DNA of 64,000 nt, from positions 62,001 to 126,000 of IMG/VR virus record IMGVR_UViG_3300023174_000042. One strand, given 5' to 3'. Both the position numbers and the translations under genes were made by a program. The notes below the pieces were generated by a model. That model did no database searches, was not told where the DNA came from, and worked only from the letters and a program-made list of their open reading frames with translations. Below are positions 18,421 through 57,510 of this stretch, piece after piece (position 1 is the first letter of the stretch; every line of letters starts with the position of its first letter).

Positions 18421-21400
18421 TCTTCTACTGTTGCAACATAAAGTTTATAAAATCTATCAACGGCAGTTTTTCCGTTGTTTAATCCGAAGTAAAAGTGGTA
18501 TGGAGCACCAACTATAACCGCTTGATTCGGATTGCCAGTAGGTTGTCCTTGTATTATTGTATTCATTGGTGGTTGTGGGTTGGGATTTCCATTAATATCA
18601 TAATTTGTAATATACCCTAATTTGGTGGTTGATGTAATATATTTTTCACTTAAGGTTGTAAAATCCAAATCTTGATATTTTTTCTTGAAAAATCCTCCTG
18701 AACTGATTGTATTTGTATACCAATTATTATCTTCTGTTCCAAAAATGTTTGATGATGGATTACTTTGTTTTAACGACCATTTATAATTTGGGACAACTTG
18801 AGACTTTGTGTAACCAAATTTTTCTTCAATCAAAGGGGTAAAATTATAGGTTTCAATTCCTGGAGATTCTATTTTTCGATATCTTAAATTAGTTGTTGGT
18901 GTTTGGAAAAATAATCCCATAACAGGTTTAAGTTGATTTCCTGATGCTCCGTTATCTCCAAAATAGATGTAATTGGCCGCTGGAACATTTTCTGTTATAA
19001 AAGGTAAAACTTTCCATTCTGAATTTATCGACAGCATTTGGGCCCAATCCCCGTCAATTCTATATCCCCCTCTTGTGCTGTTGAAAAATTGAACTATCCC
19101 TTTTCCTTCGCTTGAATTTCCTCCATTTGTGATTGGTATCATTCTCTGTCTAACACCATCGTTAAGTATTCGTGATAAAAACCCAAGTTGTATAATATCA
19201 GAGTTGTCTTGATATGAAGTTGCTTTTAGTTGATCGGCGTAGTATGATCCAAAACCATCCACACCACCAGTACAACAAACTTCATTTATAAAATAATCTC
19301 TAGGTCCTAAATCAACAACCGTTGTTGGAAATTGTATTTGTTTTTCGTTATATCCAAATCCAGGGAATTTAGCCAAGGAACTTTGTGAATTGTAACTTGG
19401 CGAATCTTTTCCAATAAACTCTTGAGTTGTATTATTCCAAGGTGATGATCTATAATAAAAATTGTTTGTTAGTTCATTAAAAACAATAACATTTTCACAA
19501 TAATTATAATTAGGTTTGGTTGGGTTTAGACCAAAAGTTGTGGTTTTATTAAAGTTAAACATATACAAAACACCATTTATCCAATTGTTTTGAAACACCT
19601 GAGCAAAAACACCTCTACAGGCAGCAAAATTCATTGTAAATCTAACTTTCCATTCTAAAAACAATCTAGCGTCTTCACCATACTCTTTTAAGTATGTTTT
19701 ATTCAATAAACAGTAACATCCATTAATCATTCTGTTTTCAGGAACAGAACATTGACCTGAAGGAACAACGCCAACATTACTTCCTGATCCAGTATAACAA
19801 GCCAAAGGAACCATACCCTCACAAGTAAGAGTTTCTGTAAGTCCAGAAGTTATTGAATCATTATCTTGATGTTCGCCAGTTGCTAAATCACCACCTGCGG
19901 TTACTACAGGTTCAGTTTGTGTTCCGTTTACGATATAAAAAGCAAAATTGTCATTTTGGTGTAAAGCATAACCTGTTTGTGTTCCTGATGGTCCATTTTC
20001 GATACCTGTAGAAGTTGGAAGTCTATCTGACCTCATCACAACACGGTTGCTGTTTGCCACAGGAAATGAAATTGGGGATAAATTTTGTCTGTAATATGCA
20101 GGAGAATAAAGTGCCGATAAATTACCCATGTTGTTAATTCCTGTATAAAAAGTAGAACTAGTGTCAAAATATTCGCCTATCTGACAATTAGAATTACAAG
20201 GTGGGTTACTATTACTATTTCCTGTTTGCATGTAAATACTTGTAGTATTAAAATCATTAACCCACCTTAAATAAGTTCCACCAACAGTGTAATTTGATAA
20301 AGGGGGTAGTGTTGGTATGTTGAATCCGTTTGGAATGGTTTGTTGTAATAAAGTTGTGCTTTGTTGATTTGTTTTCCATTGACCTGGATATGGTGAATAT
20401 CCATTAGACACTGAAGTGTCGTCGGTGCTCAAATAATAGTATGGTAAGTTTGAAGTAAATGCAGTGTATTGTGTTGGGTCAGGTGTAAAAGTAAATGATG
20501 GAAAATATAACGTTTGATTTCCATTATTTACGGTATTATGTGTTGTCGGTTTTAATGATGTGTTTAATCCTTGTATTGGAATGTTTAAATAATAATCTCC
20601 TTGTATTATAAAATTTCCATATGATGTTCCAAATATTTTAGACACGTCATATGAAATTGTTTGTTTTGCGGTGAACGGATCTACCCCTCTGACAAAGATA
20701 CAAATTTCGTAAGTTTGATATCCTTGCATTGATTGGATTATATTATAAAGAGAATTACTTGCTCCACAAGGGGCGGTATAATTTATATCATGATACAAAT
20801 ATTCGTCAGGGAAGAAACCTGCGGTAAAACTTGCCTGATTAACAAAATCCGTATAAGTTATTCCTGTAATTAATTGAAAGTATTCAATATCTGTTGGGTA
20901 TTGAAGGTATGACTGCTCAACTTGGGGATTACCTATTACAGGTTTTTGACTCACTTGTGGTGAATTAAGGACGATCGTAGCAGGCAATGAACCTGAAGGA
21001 TTGTTAGGATTTGCATAATTGATTGATATAGATGTTTGACCTGTTAATGTTGTTCCTGTTATTGAGTTATTTTGAAATTGGTTTGTTGTTGCTCCAGTCA
21101 AATTTACCATTCTTAAAGAAGATCCTGAATCCATATAATTTGGATTTTGGAATGTTACAATGTTTCCAACTCCTAAAGATGATGTAGATCCTGCATTCAT
21201 CAGAACTACAACAACCTGATCTTCAAATGGTGTTGATCCTGATGTTGGGTTTACTAACGTTTTTATCCTATTTACACCAGTTCCATATGCTGAAGTTGTA
21301 TTACTTTTAAAGTATTTGTCTCTTGTGTTAAATTCATTTAATTTTTGTGAAAAGGTTACAGAAGTAGGATAAGCAAAATATCTATCATCTTTACCTGCGT

Positions 21401-23975
21401 TTTTGGCGGCCGTAAACAAAAATGGTTGTGGTGCTTTTAATAAGTAAGCTTCGTTTGGTATATACTTGTTTGGGTCTGTAGAACTTAAAACATCATATCC
21501 TGATGCAATTCTTTTAAAATCTAAAGAGGCCCTAACGGCAACATCAGTAGTAATGTCAGGATTATTGGAGCCAAGTAACGTTGTTAACGATTTACATGGA
21601 GGATAAGGATCGTTGCCGGCAGAGTCATTATTGAAATTTGGGTGGTCTATTAAATACGATCCAGAAGAGTTTAGAGGTGCAATAATGGTTTGTGATGTTG
21701 CTAAAATTGTATTGTTTGGTCCTGTTGATGATTGTGTTTCGGCGTTAACTTGTGCTTGCACTGAATTAGAATCAAAATTATCGTCTTGTTCTGCATTTTT
21801 ACAATCACAATCGCAACTTGTACAGTCAGGATATGATATCATTGGTAATCCAATTCTTGGGAAACCTTTGACTTTTATAGCCGCAAGGGTGGCAAATGCG
21901 GTAAATGTTGCCGCCAATGCTATTTTGAACGCGGCAATTGCGATTTGTGCAATTCCCCATAATAAATTTCTTATAGTTTCTGCCAATAATCCGGCATTTA
22001 TGACAACACCAAGTCCAGTACTAAGAACACCCGCAGCGTCGTTTATTGCTGCCAATCCTGTTTGGATTGCCTCCAATCCAGACACAACAGCATCATAAGT
22101 TAAATAAATTCCAAGTATTATCAAAACATATTTGAGTACTGGCCACATAAATGAAATTAAGTGAGCAACAAATAAAAGAGTTAATATTGGAAATGTTAAA
22201 ATGTTTATAAGAATATTAAAAACAAAAAATATTGCATCAAAATTTCTTATAATATCATTTACAGGAAAAGTATTTACTGTGGATTTACAAGATCTATTAT
22301 CAATTTCTTTAATCCCCAAATGTCTTGCTCTACCAATACCTTTTTTATAACGATCCAAAAACATGGCAGTGGTGTAAACTTTATTATAATGAAATTCATA
22401 AAATGTGTCTTCACATTTAAGGGCTTCTTGTGTATTGGCATAATCATCCCAATCTGTACTAAACGCATATGATCTTAGCAAATTAAATAATTCTTCTGGA
22501 TATGATGTAAATACGATTGATTGAGATTGTGAAGAATCAATAGGTGTTGCAACAATTTGTATGGTATCTCCAACATTAAAGGGTATTGAATTTATACTTC
22601 CAATATAGAGTTGTCCATTAAGATAAATTGAATATGAACTAACATTGTTTGTTGTCGGTTGTGATAATCCAAAATTCACACCAAAAATATTAGTCGCTGT
22701 TATTCCACTTGTTGATCCGGCCGGTATTGATGGATATGTGTAAGTTCCTGACGATGAGTTTATAAATGGATCGTTTCCTGAATTATATGTGTTGTTCCAT
22801 CCATATTCTTTAACATTAGGAACTAAAAAATTTGCTCTCTGAAAGCTTCCTTGTAATCCTTGTTCGTTTTGCCATTTAAACTTGAACCTATACCTCCCTT
22901 TTGTTGGTATACCTTTTTTTGGATCATTTGATATAACCTGTTGTCCGAATTCGTTTGTATAAACATAGTCCAAATTCATTGGGACGTTAAGTAAATAAGT
23001 TCCGTCAGAATCAATAACTTTCCCTTCTTGTTCAATTTGATATCTTTCTAAGATTGGGAGTCCTTTGTCGTCTGAGTATATTGTATGTCTAATGGCTTGA
23101 ATTTCTCCTGGACCCGCAACTAATTCACATAAATTACCTGTGTTATTTTTTGGTTTACATTTAACCTTTAAGGCGTCGTCATCACTTGTTGAGATGATTG
23201 ATCCCATAAAAATTGCTGTGGGTTGGATGTTGATATTTGCTTGTTTTGTTAAGTCAAAATCAACCCTTGTTATACCAATTTGACAAAGGTCCGCATCTCC
23301 CCAAAAAGGTCTAACATCAACATCAAAAACTAAATTTTTAATTTGGGGTAATTCTCTAAGGTTTGTGGACGATTTAAATCTAGCACCATTTACTTGACTT
23401 TCAGTTGCCAAACCTTGTTGAATTAAATCTTGTGGTGATAATGAAAAACAACCTATATCTGATAAATCAACGTCCATAACAATCGTTTGAGTCCCGATTG
23501 GAACTCCAAAAAACATAAAATCACCACTTTCATTTGTTGTAACGGTGAACCTATAATATTTGTCGTATACCTCAATATACGACCCATCCATCAAAACATC
23601 CGCCTTATTAGGAAATGAACCGGTTGATACGTGACCTTTATATGATGGCAGTTTGGGTAATAAATTATATCTATAACCATCAGCGTTGGTTTCAGTTATC
23701 GTTTTATATGGATATAGTTCTGAAATTACTGGATTTAATTCATCAGCAGCCTCTAATGGTATAAAAACCGATACTTTAGCGTTTGGCAATCCAAATCCTC
23801 CGTTTACAAAAACTCTACCCGTCACAACTCCATAATCAGAACAAAAACGAGTATACACATCGTTTGCCAAAATCTTTAAAGATAATATCTCCAAAGATTC
23901 CCAATCCTGTTCTAAATTAACGTTTATGTATTTGTCTACACCAACTTGGGTTCTTATTCTATATGATTTAGGCAT
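18417..23975 (-). CDS. Very large baseplate-associated protein with carboxypeptidase-regulatory-like domain and an internal hydrophobic (TM-like) segment
   Basis: VVTGRVFVNGGFGLPNAKVSVFIP and TTNESGDFMFFGVPIGTQTIVMD (prealbumin/CarboxypepD_reg-like); ~120-aa hydrophobic stretch at ~21875-22240. Confidence 0.6.
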   Translation of the reverse strand: MPKSYRIRTQVGVDKYINVNLEQDWESLEILSLKILANDVYTRFCSDYGVVTGRVFVNGGFGLPNAKVSVFIPLEAADELNPVISELYPYKTITETNADGYRYNLLPKLPSYKGHVSTGSFPNKADVLMDGSYIEVYDKYYRFTVTTNESGDFMFFGVPIGTQTIVMDVDLSDIGCFSLSPQDLIQQGLATESQVNGARFKSSTNLRELPQIKNLVFDVDVRPFWGDADLCQIGITRVDFDLTKQANINIQPTAIFMGSIISTSDDDALKVKCKPKNNTGNLCELVAGPGEIQAIRHTIYSDDKGLPILERYQIEQEGKVIDSDGTYLLNVPMNLDYVYTNEFGQQVISNDPKKGIPTKGRYRFKFKWQNEQGLQGSFQRANFLVPNVKEYGWNNTYNSGNDPFINSSSGTYTYPSIPAGSTSGITATNIFGVNFGLSQPTTNNVSSYSIYLNGQLYIGSINSIPFNVGDTIQIVATPIDSSQSQSIVFTSYPEELFNLLRSYAFSTDWDDYANTQEALKCEDTFYEFHYNKVYTTAMFLDRYKKGIGRARHLGIKEIDNRSCKSTVNTFPVNDIIRNFDAIFFVFNILINILTFPILTLLFVAHLISFMWPVLKYVLIILGIYLTYDAVVSGLEAIQTGLAAINDAAGVLSTGLGVVINAGLLAETIRNLLWGIAQIAIAAFKIALAATFTAFATLAAIKVKGFPRIGLPMISYPDCTSCDCDCKNAEQDDNFDSNSVQAQVNAETQSSTGPNNTILATSQTIIAPLNSSGSYLIDHPNFNNDSAGNDPYPPCKSLTTLLGSNNPDITTDVAVRASLDFKRIASGYDVLSSTDPNKYIPNEAYLLKAPQPFLFTAAKNAGKDDRYFAYPTSVTFSQKLNEFNTRDKYFKSNTTSAYGTGVNRIKTLVNPTSGSTPFEDQVVVVLMNAGSTSSLGVGNIVTFQNPNYMDSGSSLRMVNLTGATTNQFQNNSITGTTLTGQTSISINYANPNNPSGSLPATIVLNSPQVSQKPVIGNPQVEQSYLQYPTDIEYFQLITGITYTDFVNQASFTAGFFPDEYLYHDINYTAPCGASNSLYNIIQSMQGYQTYEICIFVRGVDPFTAKQTISYDVSKIFGTSYGNFIIQGDYYLNIPIQGLNTSLKPTTHNTVNNGNQTLYFPSFTFTPDPTQYTAFTSNLPYYYLSTDDTSVSNGYSPYPGQWKTNQQSTTLLQQTIPNGFNIPTLPPLSNYTVGGTYLRWVNDFNTTSIYMQTGNSNSNPPCNSNCQIGEYFDTSSTFYTGINNMGNLSALYSPAYYRQNLSPISFPVANSNRVVMRSDRLPTSTGIENGPSGTQTGYALHQNDNFAFYIVNGTQTEPVVTAGGDLATGEHQDNDSITSGLTETLTCEGMVPLACYTGSGSNVGVVPSGQCSVPENRMINGCYCLLNKTYLKEYGEDARLFLEWKVRFTMNFAACRGVFAQVFQNNWINGVLYMFNFNKTTTFGLNPTKPNYNYCENVIVFNELTNNFYYRSSPWNNTTQEFIGKDSPSYNSQSSLAKFPGFGYNEKQIQFPTTVVDLGPRDYFINEVCCTGGVDGFGSYYADQLKATSYQDNSDIIQLGFLSRILNDGVRQRMIPITNGGNSSEGKGIVQFFNSTRGGYRIDGDWAQMLSINSEWKVLPFITENVPAANYIYFGDNGASGNQLKPVMGLFFQTPTTNLRYRKIESPGIETYNFTPLIEEKFGYTKSQVVPNYKWSLKQSNPSSNIFGTEDNNWYTNTISSGGFFKKKYQDLDFTTLSEKYITSTTKLGYITNYDINGNPNPQPPMNTIIQGQPTGNPNQAVIVGAPYHFYFGLNNGKTAVDRFYKLYVATVEE

Positions 23976-24050: not shown

Positions 24051-25892
24051 CTACGAAAAGTTTACCGATCTGAGGTTTAAAACTCTGACATTTATATCTT
24101 TGTTTGGGTATCTAATTTGATATGTTTGTGTAGGTGTTGCAAACAAGGTGTCTGCGGTTGGTTGAATTTGTCTTGTGGCAGGGTCTGCATACGGCATAGA
24201 TGTTTGACTAGATGAATATTGTCCCCCAACTTGATTAAAGAATAAAATATCTGTAATACTTACAATTCCATTTTCTGACTGAATTAATCTTCTGAGTTCA
24301 GAAATATTAACATTTTGACCAAGGTTTCTAACTAGCGGGTTGAAGAAGTCGGTAATAATTTGAATTGTTTTTGAGATAATCGCTCCTTGATTTTGACTAT
24401 TGTCTAAAACAACATCAACTGTTACGGCCAAGTCTATTGTTTCTGCGGCTTCAATAGATATGTAGTCATTTATCATTCGATAGTTTGATAAATAATTTGC
24501 AACATTTTGTTTTAAAGTGTTTGACACAACATTTGTTAAAGTTCCGCTTGAATCATAAGACAACATTTTAATTTTTATCTTGTTGTTTTCTTCAGTTATG
24601 GCAACTTTTGCTGGTGCCCCAAATTGAGAAGGCATTGTTCTAATTAACGAATTGTAATCATTTACTGTTACGGCCCTGTTTTGTGCTGCGAAGTTAAATG
24701 CCACCAAATTTCTAACATCTTCAGTTGTTGGTGGATTTGCCCCACCAATGGCAGCAGTTACATTGTTACATTGTAAACTATTTATTACACTATTGTTTAC
24801 AGTTTGTGATGGTCCATTAACCGCAAATGAAACGGTTCCAATTTGGTTGATTGTATTAATACCTAAATTACTTGATAAACCACCACCAATTCTATATTGA
24901 ACAAATAATGTCGTGTTTGGCGAAAGAGCGGCACCTAAAGCATAATTATTTGTATATCTACTTAAATCAAACCCTTTCCCATCAATTGCAAATTGTCTTA
25001 ATTGTTCATCGGCAGAAATATTTCCCCCACCAAAAGTCATTTTACAAAATCCTTCAGGTGTATATTCAGAAATGAATTTGTTTGATGTTGTAATATATCT
25101 TCCCACTTTAATACCTGGTTGATCTGAAGTTTTGGTTGGGTCTTCAATAAAAACTCTATCTTGAACTAACGCATCAACTTCATACCATCTTTCGGGACCT
25201 AAACTTAAAAAATCTTGTGGGTTTGGAATTGTCGAATATTGTGTTCCAGGTTTTAATAAAACACTTGTAATACCCAAAACATTTTTTTCTGGTAAGAACA
25301 ATTCTAAATAAGGTTTTGAGTCATTTGGTGTAATTACTCTTTTATATACTTTTGTAATACCATTTACAACAACTTCTCTTTTTACGATCGTATAATTTAA
25401 TAATTTACCGCTAGAATCAAAGTTGGGAATTTTTACTCTGTTTGGTGATCCTTCGGCATTAATTGGTGATGCAAAGTCAATATCGTATACGGTTTCAAAC
25501 GGCTGTCCTCCACCATTAACTTGTGAACCCCTTCTTAAAACACCACAATATCTTAAATCTTCTCTATCTCCGAAGGCAGGAACTGTAATTGAAAAATCAA
25601 TTAAGGCAACTGATGGTCTTTGACCAGGAACTTTAAGACCATATGTTCTTGCAATATTATATACAGAATTTTTTTGTTGTGCGAATTGTAATACAGTTTC
25701 TTGTATACTTCGATCAATTTGATAATTTAAATTATCGGTGACCGCAGCATTCAAATCCAACATAACAGAAAAAATACCTGCGTCATTAAAATTTTGGACT
25801 AAGTCAGGATAATAGGCTCGTGTAAAGTTAATCAACTCGGTTCTTACACCTTGAAAGTCCCTTGCAACGTATGATATTTTCTTTTCTGCCAT
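24051..25892 (-). CDS. Baseplate wedge protein, T4 gp6/baseplate J-like
   Basis: ARDFQGVRTELINF...FNDAGIFSVMLDLNA...AQQKNSVYNIARTYG N-domain; GGANPPTTEDVR...AQNRAVTVNDY. Confidence 0.85.
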   Translation of the reverse strand: MAEKKISYVARDFQGVRTELINFTRAYYPDLVQNFNDAGIFSVMLDLNAAVTDNLNYQIDRSIQETVLQFAQQKNSVYNIARTYGLKVPGQRPSVALIDFSITVPAFGDREDLRYCGVLRRGSQVNGGGQPFETVYDIDFASPINAEGSPNRVKIPNFDSSGKLLNYTIVKREVVVNGITKVYKRVITPNDSKPYLELFLPEKNVLGITSVLLKPGTQYSTIPNPQDFLSLGPERWYEVDALVQDRVFIEDPTKTSDQPGIKVGRYITTSNKFISEYTPEGFCKMTFGGGNISADEQLRQFAIDGKGFDLSRYTNNYALGAALSPNTTLFVQYRIGGGLSSNLGINTINQIGTVSFAVNGPSQTVNNSVINSLQCNNVTAAIGGANPPTTEDVRNLVAFNFAAQNRAVTVNDYNSLIRTMPSQFGAPAKVAITEENNKIKIKMLSYDSSGTLTNVVSNTLKQNVANYLSNYRMINDYISIEAAETIDLAVTVDVVLDNSQNQGAIISKTIQIITDFFNPLVRNLGQNVNISELRRLIQSENGIVSITDILFFNQVGGQYSSSQTSMPYADPATRQIQPTADTLFATPTQTYQIRYPNKDINVRVLNLRSVNFS

Positions 25893-25898
25893 ATAATG

Positions 25899-26357
25899 TT
25901 AAATATTGATAATGATAAAATCTTGAGATTCAAAAGCCGAGTCGGTTATTTTATAGTCGATTTTGATTTTTGCGGTGTGCTCTAAAGTTGCTATATTAGT
26001 AACTTTGAACTCTCTTTCACCTTCTTTGTTTATTGTATAACCTTTATCCTCTAAACCTGCGGATGCTGGTTCTACACTTATATTGGTTACCTGTAAATTT
26101 GGCATATAAGTTCCAATGGTGCTTCTTATTTCGGCTTCAATATCTGAAAAAGTTGGTCCATCTAAAGGTTCAAATATAAACTCATAAAGACGAGTTCCAA
26201 AATCAGGTAAAAAATATCTAGATCCCTTTCTTGTTAATAATAAATGAACTAAATTTGCTCTTATTTCTCCCTCAGTTGAATTTGTTACGTCCAAATAACG
26301 ACCTGTAAAAGAGTCAACAAAAGGAAAAGAAATTCCATAAGTAATACCATTTGCCAT
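25899..26357 (-). CDS. Baseplate wedge subunit gp25-like (GPW/gp25)
   Basis: IRANLVHLLLTRKGSRYFLPDFGTRLYEFIFEP is the gp25 signature. Confidence 0.9.
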   Translation of the reverse strand: MANGITYGISFPFVDSFTGRYLDVTNSTEGEIRANLVHLLLTRKGSRYFLPDFGTRLYEFIFEPLDGPTFSDIEAEIRSTIGTYMPNLQVTNISVEPASAGLEDKGYTINKEGEREFKVTNIATLEHTAKIKIDYKITDSAFESQDFIIINI

Positions 26358-27365: not shown

Positions 27366-27405
27366 AAAAATAAATAGTTTGTGTGACTAAAAAAATTATA
27401 AAACG

Positions 27406-27436
27406 AAAAAACCCTCCTTTTTGGGGAGGGTTTTTT
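27406..27436. terminator. Bidirectional-type intrinsic terminator
   Basis: AAAAAACCCTCC/GGAGGGTTTTTT perfect 12-bp inverted repeat with 7-nt loop just after the 27451 stop. Confidence 0.85.
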
Positions 27437-27450
27437 ATTTATTGTCTTAA

Positions 27451-27981
27451 TTAACCTTTATAAGTGTTATCACCATAAGTGTTATCACCCATACGCATTA
27501 CTTTATCTGCTGTAAATTGTCCAAATCTTTTATCATAATCATCTCTCATTCTAGCCTGATCTGAAAAATCATGTGCAACTTCAGATTTTAACATTCTTTC
27601 AATTTTTTGAGGATTGTCTCCTTTGAATAATAAAACTTTTCTTTCTCTAAATCCTTCGTCTCTTGTCATATCAGTAGTATCTATACCCCAATATATTTCA
27701 CCTGTATTGTTGTCACGGTACTCTTTCATAGTAAAGAAGTTACCTTCTTGGTCACCACCAGTTGATTTTTTAACATTACCTGTTGGTGTCATTTTGTTTA
27801 TTAATAATCTATTAGTTACGTAATCATAAGCTTTCTTAACAATAGCTCCACCAAGAGCAAGTCCTCCTAATGTCATCAAAACACCTTCATTGAGGTTTTT
27901 GTTATTTTTTTGCTCCTCATTAATCACTCTTTTAACGATACGAACAAGATCTGATTCAGTTAATTTTATAATTCTTTTCAT
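27451..27981 (-). CDS. Putative capsid-packaged protein with propeptide and hydrophobic helix
   Basis: MKRIIKLTESDLVRIVKRVINE...LNE followed by GVLMTLGGLALGGAIVKK; own TATTTAT motif (28001-28007) and own terminator. Confidence 0.6.
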   Translation of the reverse strand: MKRIIKLTESDLVRIVKRVINEEQKNNKNLNEGVLMTLGGLALGGAIVKKAYDYVTNRLLINKMTPTGNVKKSTGGDQEGNFFTMKEYRDNNTGEIYWGIDTTDMTRDEGFRERKVLLFKGDNPQKIERMLKSEVAHDFSDQARMRDDYDKRFGQFTADKVMRMGDNTYGDNTYKG

Positions 27982-28014
27982 AACTTTTTTTAATTTACTA
28001 ATAAATATATCAAT

Positions 28015-28046
28015 AAAAAAAAAATCACTAATTTCTTAGTGATTTT
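28015..28046 (-). terminator. Intrinsic terminator ending the replication/nrdJ transcript
   Basis: AAAATCACTAA/TTAGTGATTTT stem with TTTC loop plus an A-run giving a U-tract on minus. Confidence 0.75.
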
Positions 28047-28254
28047 CTACAATTTTATTTCCTTTAACATATTTTGGTTCGTATGGACAATTTAAACATT
28101 TTGATCCACAACAAAAACCCCTTTTTATATGATAAGATTTGGTCATAACAATTTTCCCGTTTTCATTTTCGTAAAAATCAGGTTCAGGAGATTTTTTTAG
28201 TGTCTCCTGAACATATAATTGTTGTATCCAATCGTTTGATGCTTTTATTGTCAT
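28036..28254 (-). CDS. DUF5522-like small Cys-rich metal-binding protein
   Basis: DFYENENGKIVMTKSYHIKRGFCCGSKCLNCPYEP matches the recalled DUF5522 pattern HxxRGxCCxxxCxxCPY. Confidence 0.7.
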   Translation of the reverse strand: MTIKASNDWIQQLYVQETLKKSPEPDFYENENGKIVMTKSYHIKRGFCCGSKCLNCPYEPKYVKGNKIVENH

Positions 28255-28259
28255 TTGTA

Positions 28260-29039
28260 TTAAGTATTTTCTTTTTTATTTTCAACAACTAATTTAAATG
28301 TAAACATATAATAATTCTTACCTTTTTTAACACATTTATAAGGTTCACCGTTTTTAGCTTTAACTCTAACAGTATGTGCTGGAATCCCTAAATGTTTATT
28401 AACCTCAACAGCACTTTCGTATCTACCATATTCAACACCATTATTATCGTAAACAATAATATAACCTAACCATCTTCCGTTTTTATTCCCACTTTTTACT
28501 TCAGACCACAATTTCCTTTTTTCTGGATCTTCTAAACTTTTTTTTACACCCATAGATAATTTATCTTTGTGTTCTTTTGTATTTACAACTTTCTTTAAAC
28601 CATTTAAAACTTTTACCCTATAATCTTTGTTTTCCCATTTTTTTCTTGTTAAATCACTCATTTTTTTTCTATAATCATCTGTTAAATTTTTTTTTGCCGT
28701 TTCAGATAATTTTTTACGAGTAATTTCTTTTAGTTCATCACATTTGTTTGTGAATGTGTCTCCACCAGTACCACCGATAGTGTAATTATATCCATTTAAA
28801 ACTGTATCATATTGTTCTATATATTGAACTTCTAAATCGTTTATTTTATCTGAAGTTGTTTGATTGAGAATTATAAACTCAAAATTATCCCATCCATAGT
28901 GTAGAATTGCATCATAAAGTTTGTGTCTTTTTTTTCCAACCAACATTTTATGTTCGGTTAATCTTTTATTTGGTCTTTTTGTTTTTCCAATGTATAGTTT
29001 ACCATTAATTTTATTTTTTATACAATATATATATTCCAT
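28260..29039 (-). mobile_element. Free-standing GIY-YIG homing endonuclease (Seg-like)
   Basis: YIYCIKNKINGKLYIGKT...RLTEH...YGWDNF...LE...GYN-x3-GG, then basic NUMOD-like repeats and a C-terminal HTH-like segment; start placed at ATG 29039 behind GGAGG (track uses ATG 29051). Confidence 0.9.
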
Positions 29040-29041
29040 AG

Positions 29042-29076
29042 AACCTCCCATTTATTTAATAAATATCTGGGAGGTT
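29042..29076 (-). promoter_or_regulatory. RBS-sequestering hairpin with a late promoter in its loop
   Basis: AACCTCCCA (29076-29068) pairs with TGGGAGGTT (29050-29042); loop contains TATTTAT (29065-29059). Confidence 0.8.
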
Positions 29077-29099
29077 GTGAAATTAAGTAAAAATCATTT

Positions 29100-30965
29100 T
29101 TAAAATTCTGAAACAGTACAAGCTCCACCAGCACAAGCCGCTTCACCACTAAGATTTGTATTGTCTTGTAATTCAATTACTTTTGTTAGATCAACATTAT
29201 TTAATGTTTTTAACAAGTTTTCGAATTGTTCTTTGGTGCAATCTTCAAAAGGTGCTTGTGTGTAAGTTCCTCCGTTATAAGGTAATACCGATAATCCATT
29301 ATAAAATTTTCTTGATTTCCACATCCATTCTCCAACTTTTTCCCACTCATCTTCTTTAATTGATACAGTTGCAGAAACGTTATGTGTGTTTTGTCCTGAT
29401 CTATGTCCAGGTTTAATCCACTCTTTAGATACTTTTTTAACTCTTTCTAACATTTGAAAAACAGATTCATATCGTAGAATCGATCCTTCTGGTGCCTTTT
29501 GAGGAATTGTAATTACTGCCGTATCATGTGGTCTGAAATATTCATCTTCAATAAGTTCGGGGTGGTTGATTGCAAGATAAGAATAAATTGCTTCATTTTT
29601 TCCAACACGAATTCTTCTTAAATAATAGTCATTGTGCCAAGCGTGAATTCCTGATGAGGTTCCTAAAACCAAAGATGAAGTTCCTGATGGTTTAACTGTG
29701 GTTGTTCTTGCCGCTTTATTAATTCCAATAATTTCAGATACTCTTTCGTTTTCATCTTTAACTGCTTGAGCCGCCGCTTCCATATCATAACCTAAAACAA
29801 CTCCCGAACCAATTCCTGTCATACCTACACCGATAAGAGCATCTTTTTCTGTTGTTCTTTTCCATACATCACGAAGATAATGAAAATCTGTATATCCTGC
29901 TTGTAATGTTCCAATGAACGCCGCTCCTTTAACTCTTTTTTCAAAATCTTCTTGTGATTTGATGTCTGACGCATTTACTTCACACAAATTACAGAATTGA
30001 TAAGGACGAAGACCGATTTCACAACAAGGATTTGTTCCCCAATCTTTATCGTTTGATAAATAAATTCCAGGTTCTCCTGCTCCTGATAATTCAATTCTTT
30101 TCCACAAGTCCATAAAATATTCTTGTGTTACTTTGTGACGAAGAAGAACCGCTGAATTATTTGCTCTTCCTCGTTGTGGATTTTGTTCCCACCAACTTCC
30201 ACTTTTACATGAAATCATATCATCATCATCGGCAGAAAATAACGAAATAAGAGCCGCTCTTCTGATACCTCCAGCCAATACTGCGTCTGCAATATGACAA
30301 ACAATATCATGAGTTTCAATTGGTGTAAGTTTTTCTCCTTCAGTTTTATTTTCAAACACTTTTGTAATATGGTGAATACAATCTTTAAGTGGTTGTGGAC
30401 CTGGAGCCTTTCCTCCTGATGTTACTAACAAAGCCCCTTTTTGTCTAATGTCTGAAAAATCAAAAATTGGTGTTGAAGATTTTAATCCAAAATAGGATTC
30501 TACTAATACTTTAATTGCGTCTGCCCATCCTTCAATAGAATCACCAATCAAATATCTTCTTGTTCTACTTGGGTTAGGTTTTTTTATTTCAGGTAATTTA
30601 TCAACATGATGTTTTTGAACTGAAAATCCTACTCCGGTTCCTCCTAAAAGTAAAAACATTGTTTCTGAAAAAGCATCCGGATGGTCAATTGGTAAATAGG
30701 CGCAATTATAAACCCTATTTGGCGAAATTTCAATTGGTTTTCCTCCAAATTGTAAAGATCTCATAGAAGGAAGAATTTTTTTGTCATATACCATTTTATA
30801 AACTTCCTCAATTTCTTCTTTAATTTGTGGATATTTTTTTTGATGCATTTCTTTGTTTCTTGTAACCAACTCTTCCCACGTTTCTCTTCTGTTTAAGTCA
30901 GGAACAAATTTTGCGTATTTCATATACACCGTAATGTCGCTCAATATTCTTTGTGAAATGTCCAT
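29100..30965 (-). CDS. nrdJ: Class II (adenosylcobalamin-dependent) ribonucleotide reductase, monomeric RTPR type
   Basis: LPSMRSLQFGG, YNCA, GGIRRAALISL, TNPCCEI (NxCxE), TTVKPSGT, C-terminal CAGGAC redox pair; no ATP cone. Confidence 0.92.
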   Translation of the reverse strand: MDISQRILSDITVYMKYAKFVPDLNRRETWEELVTRNKEMHQKKYPQIKEEIEEVYKMVYDKKILPSMRSLQFGGKPIEISPNRVYNCAYLPIDHPDAFSETMFLLLGGTGVGFSVQKHHVDKLPEIKKPNPSRTRRYLIGDSIEGWADAIKVLVESYFGLKSSTPIFDFSDIRQKGALLVTSGGKAPGPQPLKDCIHHITKVFENKTEGEKLTPIETHDIVCHIADAVLAGGIRRAALISLFSADDDDMISCKSGSWWEQNPQRGRANNSAVLLRHKVTQEYFMDLWKRIELSGAGEPGIYLSNDKDWGTNPCCEIGLRPYQFCNLCEVNASDIKSQEDFEKRVKGAAFIGTLQAGYTDFHYLRDVWKRTTEKDALIGVGMTGIGSGVVLGYDMEAAAQAVKDENERVSEIIGINKAARTTTVKPSGTSSLVLGTSSGIHAWHNDYYLRRIRVGKNEAIYSYLAINHPELIEDEYFRPHDTAVITIPQKAPEGSILRYESVFQMLERVKKVSKEWIKPGHRSGQNTHNVSATVSIKEDEWEKVGEWMWKSRKFYNGLSVLPYNGGTYTQAPFEDCTKEQFENLLKTLNNVDLTKVIELQDNTNLSGEAACAGGACTVSEF

Positions 30966-30994
30966 TTTTTTTACTTTAATTATTATTTATTTAT

Positions 30995-32374
30995 TTAATT
31001 TTGAGAGTCTTTTTGTTTTCTTTTTTCAAGTAACTCTCTAACTCTTTGTCTTTGTCTTTCTTCTTTTTGTTCTTCCAAACCTAAAAAAGTCATAGAACTT
31101 TCAGTATCTATCTCTAACATGGCGTTATCAAATTTACAATTTTCAAATACAACACCATCATCACCTATTCGAGACTTTGTAATTGCTATTGTTGCCAATT
31201 TTAATTCTTTTTGTTGTAATGTTTTTGCCACCGAAATAATTACGTGACCAACTTGTGCTTTTTTAATTGATCCTCCCATTTGATCTGTCGTTACAACTTC
31301 AGATGATATTGAAGATCTATTTCCTTGAGTTGCTGTCCATCCAACTAAGTTCATTTCGTGACACATTGCTTCAAATGCTCTCATTACAGATCCTTCACTT
31401 TTCCATTCATCACCTAAGTTTTTGTCAGGAACAATACAATCAATATAATCTAAAACAACCATATCAATTTTAATACCATCTGAAACCATTTTTCTGATTT
31501 GATTTTTAATTTGTAACATCGTCAGAGTATCAGAAGGAAGTTTTTTCAAAATCAATTTGTTTGGCATTGTTTCTTCAATTTCTTTAACTTTTGACATGAC
31601 ATCATCTTTTTTTTCTGACAAATCGTCAGGGTGTATCTTTGTCCAAAGTGTAAAATGCTTTCGTTGAATTACTTTCGAATTGTCTTCAAAAAACACTTGA
31701 AGAACGTTAAATCCGAGATTAAATGCGTGGTTTGATATTTTGGTTAAAATGGTTGATTTACCCACACCAGTTGGGGCTAAGATAACACCAATTTCTCCTT
31801 TGGCTAAACCACCTTTTAGTAGTCTATCAATACCAGGTATTCCCATCGGAATTGGGTGTCTGTAATCTTCTTCAAGCACTTGATCGAGGTTTGAAAATAC
31901 ATCTAAAATTGATGTATCTTTTGACCCCACCTGAAGAGCGGTTTTAACCATTTCTTCAAGGGTGTCATAGTTTTCAAACTCTCCACCATCAATGATCTTT
32001 TGAGCCTTCCCCATTACCTTTTGAAGTTCTTGTTGTTTACAAAATTTTAAGGCCTTTTCTTGAACGAAAGCCACGCCATCGATAGGTGCATCTTTAATTT
32101 TCTTAATTGTATCTAAAACAATTTTGGATGCTAATGCTTGTTGTAGTTCTGATTTTGTAATTTGTTCTAACGTTTCAAATGATGGTGTGTGATCGTATTT
32201 TACATAATACTCGCGGACCATTTGAATTATAATTTTGAAATATTTGTTTTCAAAATAATTGTTATCAATCACATCAATTATAGATTGTGAAAAGTCTTTA
32301 TCTACAATAATTTGATTTAATAATTGTAATTGAAAAGTGTTTCCTAAGTATTCAAAATTTTTTGTTGTCGCCAT
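30995..32374 (-). CDS. dnaB: Replicative helicase, DnaB/gp41 family
   Basis: Walker A LAPTGVGKST, VVLDYID, WTATQGNR, KSRIG. Confidence 0.92.
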   Translation of the reverse strand: MATTKNFEYLGNTFQLQLLNQIIVDKDFSQSIIDVIDNNYFENKYFKIIIQMVREYYVKYDHTPSFETLEQITKSELQQALASKIVLDTIKKIKDAPIDGVAFVQEKALKFCKQQELQKVMGKAQKIIDGGEFENYDTLEEMVKTALQVGSKDTSILDVFSNLDQVLEEDYRHPIPMGIPGIDRLLKGGLAKGEIGVILAPTGVGKSTILTKISNHAFNLGFNVLQVFFEDNSKVIQRKHFTLWTKIHPDDLSEKKDDVMSKVKEIEETMPNKLILKKLPSDTLTMLQIKNQIRKMVSDGIKIDMVVLDYIDCIVPDKNLGDEWKSEGSVMRAFEAMCHEMNLVGWTATQGNRSSISSEVVTTDQMGGSIKKAQVGHVIISVAKTLQQKELKLATIAITKSRIGDDGVVFENCKFDNAMLEIDTESSMTFLGLEEQKEERQRQRVRELLEKRKQKDSQN

Positions 32375-32404
32375 GTTTTTCTTTTTTCGTATTGATAAAT
32401 ACTA

Positions 32405-36140: not shown

Positions 36141-36180
36141 AAAAAAAGTATTATAAGGTCACAGATTGTGACCTTATAAT
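36141..36180 (-). terminator. Intrinsic terminator
   Basis: Perfect 14-bp stem ATTATAAGGTCACA/TGTGACCTTATAAT with 3-nt loop, then a T7 run on minus. Confidence 0.8.
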
Positions 36181-37120: not shown

Positions 37121-40100
37121 TTAGGACCACAATGATGTAAAAATTTGATAAGCCCTCTTGAATTCTGTATTTAATGCTCCAATTTGTTCTGGATCTTGTG
37201 TAATTTTTGTGTAAACATCATCATTTTGATTAATAGGATAATGTAATACATATTGTTTCGCCAAATTTGCAGGAACATCCTCTTCGGTTGGGAATTGGTT
37301 TGAATCTTGAATTAAAAATGTTGGGACATTTCCAACCTTTATTAAAACAAAATTTATAAAATCTTTTAAAGATCTAAAAGCGACAATTGGTAGATTTTTA
37401 TCTGTTCCTCTTGAAACGCAAAAATACTTTCTGTTTATGTATTCAAAAAACGAATCTCCGTAAACTTCCTTTAGGTTTATTGTGCTGTAATTATTTTCAT
37501 AAGCACTTATTTCTGTTCCGTTATTATTTCCTGAATCAACAAAAACAAATGTAAAAACAGATGCGGCAGTTTGGTAAGTGGTATTTGCCGTCATATCATA
37601 TTTTAATTCAATTAAATTATTTCTTAATTCAGTTAAGAATGTTTTTACTGAAACAGTTGTTGATTGTGGAGTATCTACTCCTGTAAAATTATTATATCTA
37701 GTGTTCAATTGATTTGCACAATCTTGATTTTTAGTTAAAGTGTCTTGGGATTGTAAGTTTGCTATTGTATTTTGTGCCTGAAACAATATATTAGCAGAAT
37801 CTTCTTTTTGTTTTGATTCATTTTCTTGAATTTTGCTTTGTAATTGTGAAAGAATTTTAACATTTAACGTTTGTAAAAAGTTATCTACCGTTGGCAGACT
37901 ATAAAAAGGTTGTCGTATTCCTTCAAAAACAGTGCTAAAACCATTTTCATTAACGTCATGACTTACTTTTGTAATCATGTATGGTCCAGAAAACATTGGT
38001 ATATTTCTAATATTAAAATACATCATCGGTTGTATTAAAGCACATCCCATCATATCTACAGAACAACTATAACTTCTGTTTTTATATAAATTGTATAATG
38101 AAACGCTCTGAGTTGATGATCGTCTATTTTTTTCAACATTCGCCATTTGATCCAAAATCTGTAAAGATTCGCTTGTTGGTTTACCTGGATCTTGTGAAAC
38201 ACTAAATGATTTAAATATTTGTTGGTTTTCTTTTGTTGGGTCAACATTAAACCCAACAACTTTATTTGATTTATCCCAATCTATTTTTTTTGCTTGGTTT
38301 TCTGTTAAAGGGTTATCACTTGCTCTTCTTAAATCAAAGGCATCATCTCTGAATCTATAGTCTATATTGTTGTTCAAGTTCAAATGTTCACTAGGTTTAC
38401 TTACATAGTAGCACAAAAATTTTGGGGAACTCTGTCTATAATCAACATTTAAAAAAGTCCCAAACAACATATTACCAAATTCCATAGTGCCGTCAGGTCG
38501 TGGTGTTGGGTTTTTTTGTGCGTCTTGGACGTTATAGAAATTGACATACGACGGAAGCATAAAATGTTGAAAATTGTTTTCAATTAAGATTGTTGTGACC
38601 ATATCTAAAAGAGTGTTCTTATACGAACTACTACCATTATTTTTTTCTGTTGATCCGTCTTCCAACAATTTGATAACTCCGTAAATATCAACTAAAACTT
38701 TATCGCCAACATTTCTACTTGCCCTATCAACTAACATGACATCTTCAAATAAAGTTTTGTTTTGAAAATCAAATCCTGCTATCCATGTATCGTTTAAGGC
38801 TTTAAATGTGTTCCATAATTCTGTTCTTGTTTGTTCTGTAAATCCTGCCTCTAAATTGGCTCTATTTGACGACCCATCTTCACTTATAAAAATATTTGGT
38901 AATTCTTTTCTAACCATAGGCAACATGGTGTTCAACACGTTATCAACATATTTATTTGAATCGTCAATATAGGTGTCCATTAGTTGATAAAAACTTTTTA
39001 AGTTTAAATTTTTGTTAGCTAATTTTTGAGTGGCATAAATTTTTATAAGGGGGGCAAAATCCTGAACGTTCTTTTCGTTAAAAGCAACGTTAAGGTCAAT
39101 AAAAAAATCTGTTATATATGAACCATTATTTTTATAAACAAGTTCTGGTATGGATGAATTACCAACATAATATTCTAAAGCATCCCATGTTTTGGGATTT
39201 TGTTGTTTGGATTGTGATAAACTTACTTCAGGTGGTAAATTTCCTTGTTGATATGGGCTATATATTATTGGGTTTTCAATATACCTTGTAGAAAAAGTAT
39301 AAAACAATCTTCTATCAAAATTTGATGGGTTTCCGATCTTGAAACAAACATCATAATTTATAAATCCGCCCAAAATTTGTTGGAAAGTGTCATTCTGATT
39401 CGAAATTATATTTTCAAGTTTTGTTTCTGGCGAATCTCCTGTTGGTTTATTTATCACAAGTAATTGTCTCATCAAGTAATGAAAATTTTTATATCCTTTT
39501 TCAGTGTTTGAGTCTGTGGTAACTAATCCTTGGTTTTCCGTTGGTTTTTCTTCTTTACTACTTGAATTTGGTAAAGTGTCGACATAATCATATAATGACC
39601 GACTAAAATTTAAAAATTCTGATTCAAAATTATCTAAAACTGAAATGTCAAAAGTTGTAAATAGTTCTTCTATACTTGTGTATTCAGTGTCATCACCTGT
39701 TATTAAAAAGTTTTGTTGATCTTTTTGTTCGTTTAATATCTTTTTAAGATATGTTTCTGGATTATTTTTTTTCAGTTTTGAATTATCAAACCAACCATAT
39801 TGCGAAACATTCCAAAATAACCTAACCGTCCCGTTAAACATTGCAGGATTATTAGAGAGTTCAACTTTCATAGTTCCATTTTTAAAAGCCTCTTCTTTAG
39901 CCTGATTGATATTAGAACCAAAAGATGGTAAAACATAATATAAATCAGGTTGGGTTGATGAACTAACAATTACTGACCAAGGACTAACTCTCATAGATCT
40001 AGTATTATTATTTGGGTCAAATCCTGGTAATTCAAAAATGGTTGAGTTAGTTGTGTTTAATAAAACTAATTTTTCATTGTTTATTAAGTTTTGTATTTGT

Positions 40101-57387: not shown

Positions 57388-57510
57388 ATTGTAAAATACT
57401 TTTAATTATTTATTTTTTTTTTATAAATACTTTGATTTTTATCAAAAACTTTACTTGGTAAAAAGTATTTATATCTTGGTATGATTTTATTCTGCCTTTT
57501 TTCTACCACT

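What the first reader, a model, noticed from the sequence alone, without database searches (positions are those of the whole stretch)
29037..29076. Homing endonuclease translational switch: SD hidden in a hairpin whose loop holds the late promoter
Seen (minus strand): AACCTCCCA-GATATTTATTAAATAAA-TGGGAGGTT-CT-ATG. The 9-bp stem pairs the GGAGG element. A transcript starting downstream of TATTTAT would lack the 5' arm. It is also the only clear GGAGG leader I found in the window; other genes have A/T-rich SD-less leaders. Known: T4 I-TevI and several Seg/Mob genes use this early-occluded, late-released design. Inference: the endonuclease is silenced on nrdJ read-through RNA and made only late. 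The architecture independently supports TATTTAT as the late promoter, and the lone SD hints that the gene came from an SD-using lineage.
Basis: partly seen in the sequence, partly recalled or inferred. Interest (0 to 1): 0.6.

Follow-up and report, generated by a model that had tools for sequence, protein, structure and literature searches.

The report
Homing endonuclease start-hiding promoter hairpin
A selfish endonuclease gene inserted in an uncultured giant phage has an RNA hairpin predicted to hide its translation start on read-through messages, with a promoter-like motif in the loop: the trick known from phage T4, here in a phage whose host probably ignores Shine-Dalgarno sites.

Summary
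On the minus strand a perfect 9-bp stem (29076-29068 / 29050-29042) encloses a 17-nt loop that carries TATTTAT. It is followed by CT-ATG (29039) and lengthened by a 6-bp outer helix that pairs the UG of the AUG.

The gene is a GIY-YIG homing endonuclease. It sits in an 863-bp cassette inserted between nrdJ and a DUF5522 gene. Most of 80 related phage contigs lack the cassette.

TATTTAT is the genome's dominant upstream motif (102 of 309 crude genes). The hairpin around it is seen almost only at homing endonuclease genes. It recurs with different arm sequences in distant relatives (promoter-enclosing energy median -6.8 versus -2.5 kcal/mol, p about 1e-6).

The T4-like logic is therefore well supported in silico: the start region is occluded on read-through RNA and open on RNA started in the loop.

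- "Late only" is not shown. The same motif drives the upstream dnaB-nrdJ operon.
- The phage has Bacteroidota-type signals, and those ribosomes ignore SD. Several relatives have arms with no SD.
- The 5' arm is an inverted copy of the native nrdJ 3' end.

No transcript data could be obtained. Verdict: a new variant of a known design.

The parts
29100..30965 (-). nrdJ, a class II (B12-dependent) ribonucleotide reductase of 621 aa. It is the gene upstream of the cassette and is co-transcribed with dnaB.
   Evidence: Pfam Ribonuc_red_lgC, RNR-II_ins_dom and RNR_Alpha. At least 598 relatives in IMG/VR. The dnaB-nrdJ spacer has no promoter motif and no hairpin.
29100..29117 (-). Recoded nrdJ tail at the left edge of the cassette. 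The last codons read T-V-S-E-F-stop, where endonuclease-free relatives read E-I-V-stop. The C-terminal Cys codon (29120-29118) is kept.
   Evidence: Junction comparison with L005, L007, L014, L018, L022 and others.
28255..29117 (-). The whole homing endonuclease cassette (863 bp). It is absent from most relatives, where the nrdJ stop lies a few bases from the DUF5522 ATG.
   Evidence: tblastn map of 84 loci and the junction sequences. The same cassette, with a 98% identical protein, is in L002 and L003.
29070..29097 (+). Inverted copy of the native nrdJ-end/DUF5522 junction, the presumed homing-site region. Read on the plus strand it matches the junction of endonuclease-free relatives at 23 of 28 positions, including the stop codon. 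It contains the 5' arm and the AATTTCACA box.
   Evidence: Local alignment against 15 junctions; 2 of 1000 shuffles reach the score. L084 shows the same, with 14 of 14 bases matching, p = 0.004.
29078..29083 (-). 5' strand of the outer helix (AUUUCA).
   Evidence: MFE and centroid structure.
29068..29076 (-). 5' arm of the main stem (AACCUCCCA), complementary to the purine tract.
   Evidence: L003 carries a C-to-U change here that keeps a G.U pair.
29051..29067 (-). Loop of 17 nt holding the promoter-like motif TATTTAT (29065-29059).
   Evidence: Motif enrichment 7-18 fold upstream of genes; GATATTTAT lies upstream of a gene for 26 of its 32 genome copies. Spacing analysis.
29042..29050 (-). 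3' arm (UGGGAGGUU) containing the SD-like GGAGG (29048-29044).
29049..29051 (-). Upstream in-frame ATG, 7 nt after TATTTAT. It is a candidate near-leaderless start that would give MGGSMEY...
   Evidence: the ORF listing. The spacing class of 4-8 nt is shared by 36 other genes.
29037..29039 (-). ATG favoured by homology (MEYIYCIKN...). Its UG is paired in the outer helix.
   Evidence: The Pfam GIY-YIG domain starts at residue 2. Relatives start M-I-I-Y or M-G-Y-F-I-Y.
29033..29038 (-). 3' strand of the outer helix (UGGAAU).
28260..29039 (-). GIY-YIG homing endonuclease ORF, 259 aa (263 aa if read from 29051).
   Evidence: Pfam PF01541 5e-12. phrog_314 'homing endonuclease' 8e-32. I-TevI catalytic domain 1mk0 E = 0.0045.
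28036..28254 (-). DUF5522 gene (72 aa), the native downstream neighbour of nrdJ. It now lies 5 nt after the endonuclease stop.
   Evidence: Pfam PF17653 9e-16; synteny.
28015..28046 (-). Terminator-like hairpin plus a run of ten T at the end of the dnaB-nrdJ-endonuclease-DUF5522 unit. It is followed by the next TATTTAT (28007-28001).
   Evidence: (I23).
32395..32401 (-). TATTTAT motif 20 nt before the dnaB ATG, the likely source of the read-through RNA.

Best explanation
An 863-bp free-standing GIY-YIG homing endonuclease cassette is inserted between nrdJ and a DUF5522 gene of an uncultured 273-kb phage. The phage's expression signals are of the Bacteroidota type.

The cassette's 5' control region is a hairpin whose two arms flank a copy of the phage's own promoter motif, TATTTAT.
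- RNA that reads through from the upstream dnaB-nrdJ unit contains both arms. The hairpin (about -18 to -20 kcal/mol) buries the whole translation start region: the purine tract, both in-frame AUGs, and the first codons through an outer helix. The endonuclease is then not translated from the abundant operon message.
- RNA started at the loop promoter begins downstream of the 5' arm and cannot form the hairpin. Its start region is open.

Endonuclease synthesis is thereby uncoupled from the operon it invaded and depends only on its own promoter. Because there is no terminator, transcription of the downstream DUF5522 gene is not blocked.

Shown: the sequence, the fold, the insertion polymorphism, the motif statistics, and recurrence with different arms. 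Inferred: that TATTTAT is a promoter with its start site a few bases downstream, that occlusion represses translation, and that the host is a Bacteroidota member.

The GGAGG is more likely a pairing partner, or a relic, than an essential SD.
For: - Sequence and fold.
- Opening energy of the start region: 19.4 kcal/mol on read-through RNA against 4.4-4.5 on RNA starting at 29056-29051.
- The cassette is an insertion.
- TATTTAT is the top upstream k-mer (102 of 309 crude genes within 80 nt). It often follows canonical terminators. Its spacing to the ATG is bimodal, at 4-5 nt and 13-20 nt.
- A phage sigma-70-family gene sits behind a host-type promoter.
- The hairpin is specific to endonuclease genes. 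Promoter-enclosing energy is -18.3 here; the 98 other TATTTAT sites of the genome have a minimum of -11.4 and a median of -2.0. In 133 TATTTAT gene starts of related loci, only endonuclease genes fall below -9. Across 19 endonuclease lineages against 226 other sites the medians are -6.8 and -2.5, Mann-Whitney p about 1e-6, and sites at or below -12 number 4 of 19 against 0 of 226.
- Different arms, same layout: L084/L344 (GGCTCCTTATAT / ATATAAGGAGCT), L087 (AATCCCTTTATA / TATAAAGGGATT), L088 (AAGGTC / GACCTT), L119 (TGGTG / CACCA), L102. HNH-type genes L044 and L172 and GIY-YIG gene L208 have a 3' arm that abuts or includes the ATG.
- G.U pairs on the sense strand in L003, L084 and L087 fit RNA pairing rather than DNA symmetry.
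- In L044 a canonical terminator precedes the promoter hairpin, so the two are separate elements.
- In Bacteroidetes, secondary structure of the start region tunes initiation (PMC6847099).
- Same logic as I-TevI, segB and mobE (PMC2988022).
Against: - No transcript ends or expression data exist. No RNA run was listed and the phage is uncultured.
- That TATTTAT is a promoter is inferred from position and statistics only.
- The upstream operon uses the same motif, so there may be no temporal switch.
- 15 of the 19 endonuclease lineages with TATTTAT lack a strong (-12 kcal/mol or below) enclosing hairpin, so the design is frequent but not obligatory.
- No formal column-by-column covariation count was possible, because the sequences are too divergent to align in register.
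- An inverted repeat flanking a promoter could also act at the DNA level.
Confidence: 0.55

Rival explanations
1. The strict T4-type reading of the first reader. GGAGG is a working Shine-Dalgarno site. The read-through RNA is early or middle. TATTTAT is a late-only promoter. The endonuclease is therefore made only late.
For: - The layout is the same as I-TevI, segB and mobE.
- TATTTAT precedes the tail sheath, tail tube and baseplate genes.
- SD-like leaders recur in this endonuclease family within SD-poor contigs, in about 9 of 21 leaders against 5 of 309 phage genes. This suggests the motif is retained.
Against: - dnaB, the head of the read-through unit, has the same TATTTAT motif.
- The leaders and promoters indicate a Bacteroidota host, whose ribosomes do not use SD.
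- The GGAGG-to-ATG spacer is only 4 nt.
- Relatives with the same hairpin layout lack any SD.
Confidence: 0.15
2. A DNA-level operator. The two arms and the inverted copy of the homing-site region flank the promoter and are bound by the endonuclease itself, as in I-TevI autorepression, or by another protein. This may act in addition to the RNA effect.
For: - Plus strand 29070-29097 matches the endonuclease-free nrdJ/DUF5522 junction at 23 of 28 positions, with 2 of 1000 shuffles reaching the score. L084 shows a 14 of 14 match, p = 0.004.
- I-TevI represses its own late promoter through an operator that resembles its homing site in 15 of 20 positions (PMC2988022).
Against: - The copy lies upstream of the motif rather than over it.
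- No such similarity was found for the L119-type gene at another site.
- The L087 case is ambiguous.
- The G.U pairs fit RNA, not DNA symmetry.
- The homing site of this enzyme is not known.
Confidence: 0.12
3. The hairpin is a transcription terminator, or a 3'-end stabiliser, for nrdJ mRNA, brought in by the cassette to insulate itself.
For: It is a stable stem 24 nt after the nrdJ stop. Many homing endonuclease cassettes in T4-like contigs carry a terminator followed by TATAAATA. In L087 the stem is followed by a U-rich run.
Against: - There is no U-tract after the stem, and the loop is 17 nt. The terminator scan does not call it, though it finds the real terminator at 27406-27436.
- The genome's terminators are G-rich stems followed by T runs placed before TATTTAT, not around it.
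- A terminator here would cut DUF5522 off from its operon.
- L044 has both a true terminator and the promoter hairpin.
Confidence: 0.08
4. A functionless scar. The inverted repeat arose as an inverted duplication of the target during the original insertion or repair, and persists by chance.
For: The 5' half is an inverted copy of the native junction. The cassette is young in this lineage, with copies 98% identical.
Against: - Hairpins with other arm sequences recur at other insertion sites and in HNH-type genes.
- In every case the promoter motif is in the loop and the 3' arm lies at the start codon.
- The 9-bp core is perfectly complementary although the copy differs from the target exactly where that is needed to pair.
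Confidence: 0.08

Closest known systems
I-TevI (phage T4 td intron) translational control hairpin with internal late promoter; also I-TevII and I-TevIII
   Same: It is a GIY-YIG endonuclease. A stable RNA structure on read-through transcripts sequesters the ribosome binding region. The gene's own promoter is placed so that its transcripts lack the 5' part of the structure. A homing-site-like sequence lies next to that promoter (PMC2988022).
   Different: The gene here is free-standing, not intron-encoded. The promoter motif is TATTTAT, not TATAAATA. The host type does not use SD. The upstream operon appears to use the same promoter class. Nothing here has been tested experimentally.
mobE of Aeromonas phage Aeh1 (HNH) and segB of T4: free-standing endonuclease genes with RBS-sequestering hairpins
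   Same: Both are free-standing homing endonuclease genes. mobE is embedded in a ribonucleotide reductase gene region, with a hairpin over the RBS and a late promoter (references B57 and B58 of that review).
   Different: mobE is an HNH enzyme in an SD-using T4-like phage. Here the same nrdJ site holds GIY-YIG or HNH genes in different relatives. The arms include an inverted copy of the target.
T4 late genes e, soc, 49 and others: RBS occlusion on early polycistronic RNA
   Same: The general logic is the same: the start region is closed on long transcripts and open on transcripts from an internal promoter.
   Different: Those are phage genes, not mobile elements, and the temporal classes are known experimentally.

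Membership tests
T4-type endonuclease control hairpin (I-TevI / segB / mobE class) | A homing endonuclease ORF lies immediately downstream. | tested here: met
   Pfam GIY-YIG 5e-12; phrog_314 8e-32.
T4-type endonuclease control hairpin (I-TevI / segB / mobE class) | A stable RNA structure sequesters the ribosome binding region on read-through RNA. | tested here: met
   In silico only. -20.1 kcal/mol, z = -3.3. P(unpaired) of GGAGG is 0.00. Opening cost is 19.4 against 4.5 kcal/mol.
T4-type endonuclease control hairpin (I-TevI / segB / mobE class) | The gene's own promoter is placed so that its transcripts lack the 5' arm. | tested here: inconclusive
   The genome's dominant upstream motif sits in the loop, downstream of the 5' arm. 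No start site has been mapped.
T4-type endonuclease control hairpin (I-TevI / segB / mobE class) | The internal promoter is of a later class than the promoters that give the read-through RNA. | tested here: inconclusive
   The motif precedes structural genes but also dnaB, the head of the read-through unit. There is no temporal data.
T4-type endonuclease control hairpin (I-TevI / segB / mobE class) | A consensus Shine-Dalgarno site about 8 nt before the AUG is the occluded element. | tested here: inconclusive
   GGAGG is present but only 4 nt from the ATG. The genome is SD-poor and the host type is SD-blind. Relatives have non-SD arms.
T4-type endonuclease control hairpin (I-TevI / segB / mobE class) | Translation is repressed on long RNA and relieved on short RNA. 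| not testable with these tools
   Needs reporters, toeprinting or infection experiments.
GIY-YIG homing endonuclease | A full-length GIY-YIG catalytic domain. | tested here: met
   PF01541 covers profile positions 2-78 of 78, at 46.4 bits against a cut-off of 22.6. It aligns to the I-TevI domain 1mk0, residues 4-87.
GIY-YIG homing endonuclease | Presence/absence polymorphism at a conserved site among close relatives. | tested here: met
   Present in the window, L002 and L003. Absent in most of the 80 nrdJ loci, where the nrdJ stop and the DUF5522 ATG lie a few bases apart.
GIY-YIG homing endonuclease | Cleaves the endonuclease-free allele and is copied into it. | not testable with these tools
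   Needs enzyme assays or co-infection.
Intrinsic (rho-independent) terminator | A G+C-rich stem with a short loop, followed by a U-tract. | tested here: not met
   The loop is 17 nt and the tail is CUAUGGAAU. The scan does not call it.
I-TevI-type autorepression operator | A sequence resembling the homing site at the endonuclease promoter. | tested here: inconclusive
   An inverted 28-nt match to the native junction, p about 0.002, lies upstream of the motif. The true homing site is unknown and binding was not tested.

The most novel reading that the evidence does not exclude
The 5' half of the hairpin is a deliberate inverted copy of the endonuclease's own homing site and does double duty. 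As DNA it is an operator through which the endonuclease represses its loop promoter. As RNA it is the arm that closes the start region. The retained SD-like tract would then be read only by the minority of Bacteroidia ribosomes whose anti-SD is free (those lacking bS21). That would give a third layer of restraint on a selfish gene in an SD-blind host.
Probability: 0.12. Interest if true: 0.7.

Novelty: new variant of a known kind. Interest (0 to 1): 0.45.

Why it matters
- Selfish homing endonuclease genes appear to have converged on, or carried along, the same insulation logic as in T4. Here it occurs in an abundant, uncultured clade of giant phages (at least 598 nrdJ relatives in IMG/VR) whose hosts apparently initiate translation without Shine-Dalgarno pairing.
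- This separates the two components of the classical model. What is conserved is occlusion of the start region and a promoter inside the loop, not the SD.
- The work yields a usable promoter motif (TATTTAT), a candidate phage sigma factor for this clade, and evidence for many near-leaderless messages.
- It offers a natural construct for asking whether an SD-like leader has any activity with Bacteroidia ribosomes.
- The inverted copy of the target next to the promoter hints at how such hairpins are born.

Tried and rejected
- RNA evidence: the look-up of sequencing runs listed no run for 27400-31400.
- Rfam: no family matches 28700-29400.
- Cultured relatives: there is no close phage record. 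The best hit is 68% DNA identity over nrdJ only.
- Pattern scan for the box plus motif in IMG/VR: mostly chance hits in AT-rich DNA. Only L172 and L208 were informative. The 9-mer AATTTCACA alone is not rare.
- Formal covariation count: the MAFFT alignment of seven 5' regions is not in register with the stems. I used energy comparisons instead.
- Inverted-target test at other sites: negative for the L119-type gene. For L087 it is ambiguous, because the native sequence there is itself a palindromic terminator.
- A three-part attenuator, in which the nrdJ end would pair with the 5' arm in competition with the main stem: 8 of 9 pairs are possible, but this is far weaker than the main hairpin and absent from the MFE of the long RNA. 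Rejected.
- The second GIY-YIG hit in the genome is UvrC-like, not a homing endonuclease.
- The metagenome scan gave no closer relatives of the protein, at most 47% identity.
- The large protein searches, structure prediction and complex prediction were not needed and were not run.

Full report
**What is there.** Folding the 81-nt region gives -20.1 kcal/mol (z = -3.3; none of 200 shuffles fold as well). The fold also shows a 6-bp outer helix (29083-29078 with 29038-29033) that pairs the UG of the start codon, and a small helix inside the loop. A second in-frame ATG lies at 29051, at the loop/stem junction. The repeat is one of the strongest short inverted repeats of the window. No Rfam family matches.

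**The genome.** The window is part of a 272.6-kb IMG/VR virus record estimated 93% complete, with 30% G+C. It has no close cultured relative. Neighbouring genes on the same strand are dnaB, nrdJ (class II ribonucleotide reductase), the endonuclease gene, a DUF5522 gene, and then baseplate genes.

Leaders are A-rich and G-poor, with A peaks near -3, -6, -11 and -13. SD-like cores are almost absent. Many small genes are preceded by TTTG-N19-TAnnTTTG, the Bacteroidota promoter consensus (PMC6847099). The likely host is therefore a Bacteroidota member. Ribosomes of that group do not recognise SD sequences, and initiation is tuned by start-region structure and upstream adenines.

**The promoter motif.** TATTTAT is the most enriched upstream word. 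It lies within 80 nt of 102 of 309 crude gene starts, and GATATTTAT is upstream of a gene for 26 of its 32 copies. It often follows canonical G-rich terminators with T runs. Its distance to the ATG is bimodal, at 4-5 nt and 13-20 nt. The short class implies near-leaderless messages and a start site within a few bases of the motif.

The motif precedes the tail sheath, tail tube and baseplate wedge genes, but also dnaB. The phage encodes a sigma-70-family protein behind a host-type promoter and no RpoB-like protein. I infer that TATTTAT is the phage's own post-early promoter class. 'Late only' is not shown.

**The gene is a mobile insertion.** The ORF is a GIY-YIG homing endonuclease (Pfam 5e-12; phrog_314 8e-32; weak match to the I-TevI catalytic domain). 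Among 80 loci with nrdJ 77-94% identical, most have the nrdJ stop a few bases from the DUF5522 ATG. Only L002 and L003 carry this gene (98% identical). L084 carries a 32-36% identical GIY-YIG gene at the same place. L016, L023 and L044 carry HNH-type genes there.

The cassette spans 29117-28255. It replaces the last nrdJ codons but keeps the C-terminal cysteine. The unit dnaB-nrdJ-endonuclease-DUF5522 has no terminator until about 28046-28015. Read-through RNA across the endonuclease gene is therefore expected, and a terminator at its 5' end would be polar on DUF5522.

**Is the hairpin functional?** Three lines of evidence bear on this.

1. Within the genome, no other TATTTAT site is enclosed by a comparable stem. 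The value is -18.3 kcal/mol here, against a minimum of -11.4 and a median of -2.0 for the other 98 sites.
2. In related loci, only endonuclease genes score below -9 among 133 TATTTAT gene starts.
3. Distant endonuclease genes from viral and metagenome contigs show the same layout with different arms. These are L084/L344, L087, L102, L088 and L119, plus L208, and the HNH genes L044 and L172, where the 3' arm abuts or contains the ATG.

Over 19 lineages the enclosing energy is shifted, with a median of -6.8 against -2.5 and p about 1e-6. Sites at or below -12 number 4 of 19 against 0 of 226. Changes that keep pairing as G.U on the sense strand occur in L003, L084 and L087. This favours RNA pairing over DNA symmetry. 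In L044 a true terminator precedes the promoter hairpin, so the two elements are distinct.

Modelling both transcript forms gives an opening cost for the start region of 19.4 kcal/mol on read-through RNA and 4.4-4.5 on RNA beginning at 29056-29051.

The design matches the T4 precedent (I-TevI, I-TevII, I-TevIII, segB, and mobE of Aeh1; PMC2988022). However:

- The read-through unit and the endonuclease gene share a promoter class. The hairpin may therefore insulate rather than time expression.
- The SD is not the conserved element. Several relatives occlude non-SD sequence or the start codon itself.
- In an SD-blind host the upstream ATG at 29051, 7 nt after the motif and in an A-rich context, is a plausible near-leaderless start. 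Homology favours 29039.

SD-like leaders are nevertheless over-represented in this endonuclease family inside SD-poor contigs. An origin in SD-using phages, or some residual use, remains possible.

**An unexpected feature.** Read on the plus strand, 29070-29097 is a copy of the native nrdJ-end/DUF5522 junction of endonuclease-free relatives. It matches 23 of 28 positions including the stop codon, and 2 of 1000 shuffles reach the score. L084 shows a 14 of 14 match, with a different left boundary of its cassette.

The 5' arm is thus an inverted duplicate of the presumed homing-site region. Its one difference from the native GGAGC makes it pair perfectly with GGAGG. This could show how the hairpin arose. 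It could also mark an operator like that of I-TevI. The pattern was not found at another insertion site and is ambiguous at a third.

**Limits.** No transcript data could be obtained. The promoter function, the start site, the host and the repression are all inferences. The sequences are too divergent for a column-wise covariation count.

**Verdict.** This is a new variant of a known regulatory design, of moderate interest.

Noticed in passing
whole genome G000; in the window for example 25892-25910, 57387-57430: The spacing from TATTTAT to the ATG is bimodal. 25 genes have only 4-5 nt between motif and ATG, which implies many leaderless or near-leaderless messages in this phage. Host-type TAnnTTTG promoters also sit 4 nt from some ATGs.
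   Followed up: partly
G000:C1:49350-49556 (minus strand), outside the window: The phage encodes a sigma-70-family protein (PF04542, E = 2.8e-18) in a unit behind a Bacteroidota-type promoter (TTG..TATATTTG). It is a candidate reader of the TATTTAT promoters. No RpoB-like gene was found.
   Followed up: partly
L003:1945-3005: In this close relative, nrdJ is interrupted in frame at about residues 311-320 by a roughly 1.06-kb insertion. The insertion has LAGLIDADG-type motifs and an intein-like end. It is a second mobile element in the same gene.
   Followed up: partly
nrdJ/DUF5522 junction in L008, L010-L033, L016, L023, L044, L057, L058, L062, L084: The junction is an insertion hotspot. Different relatives carry GIY-YIG genes, HNH-type genes, a conserved small ORF of about 26 codons, canonical terminators, and in L062 a 333-aa ORF whose N-terminus looks like a cytosine-C5 methyltransferase (read by eye, not tested).
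   Followed up: partly
window 37121-44170, 18417-23975, 44486-49585 (all minus strand): Three giant ORFs (2349, 1852 and 1699 aa) have no PHROG family match at 1e-5.
   Followed up: no
window 36150-36180: A perfect 14-bp inverted repeat with a 3-nt loop lies in the spacer between two minus-strand genes (I7). It was not examined.
   Followed up: no
G000:C1:254799-256112 (plus strand), outside the window: A 437-aa ORF with a GIY-YIG domain is UvrC-like rather than a homing endonuclease.
   Followed up: partly
L092-L094, L100, L131, L135, L161: Related GIY-YIG genes in T4-like contigs show the classical order: terminator, then TATAAATA, then about 25 nt, then ATG. They have no enclosing hairpin. 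TATTTATA is the reverse complement of TATAAATA.
   Followed up: no
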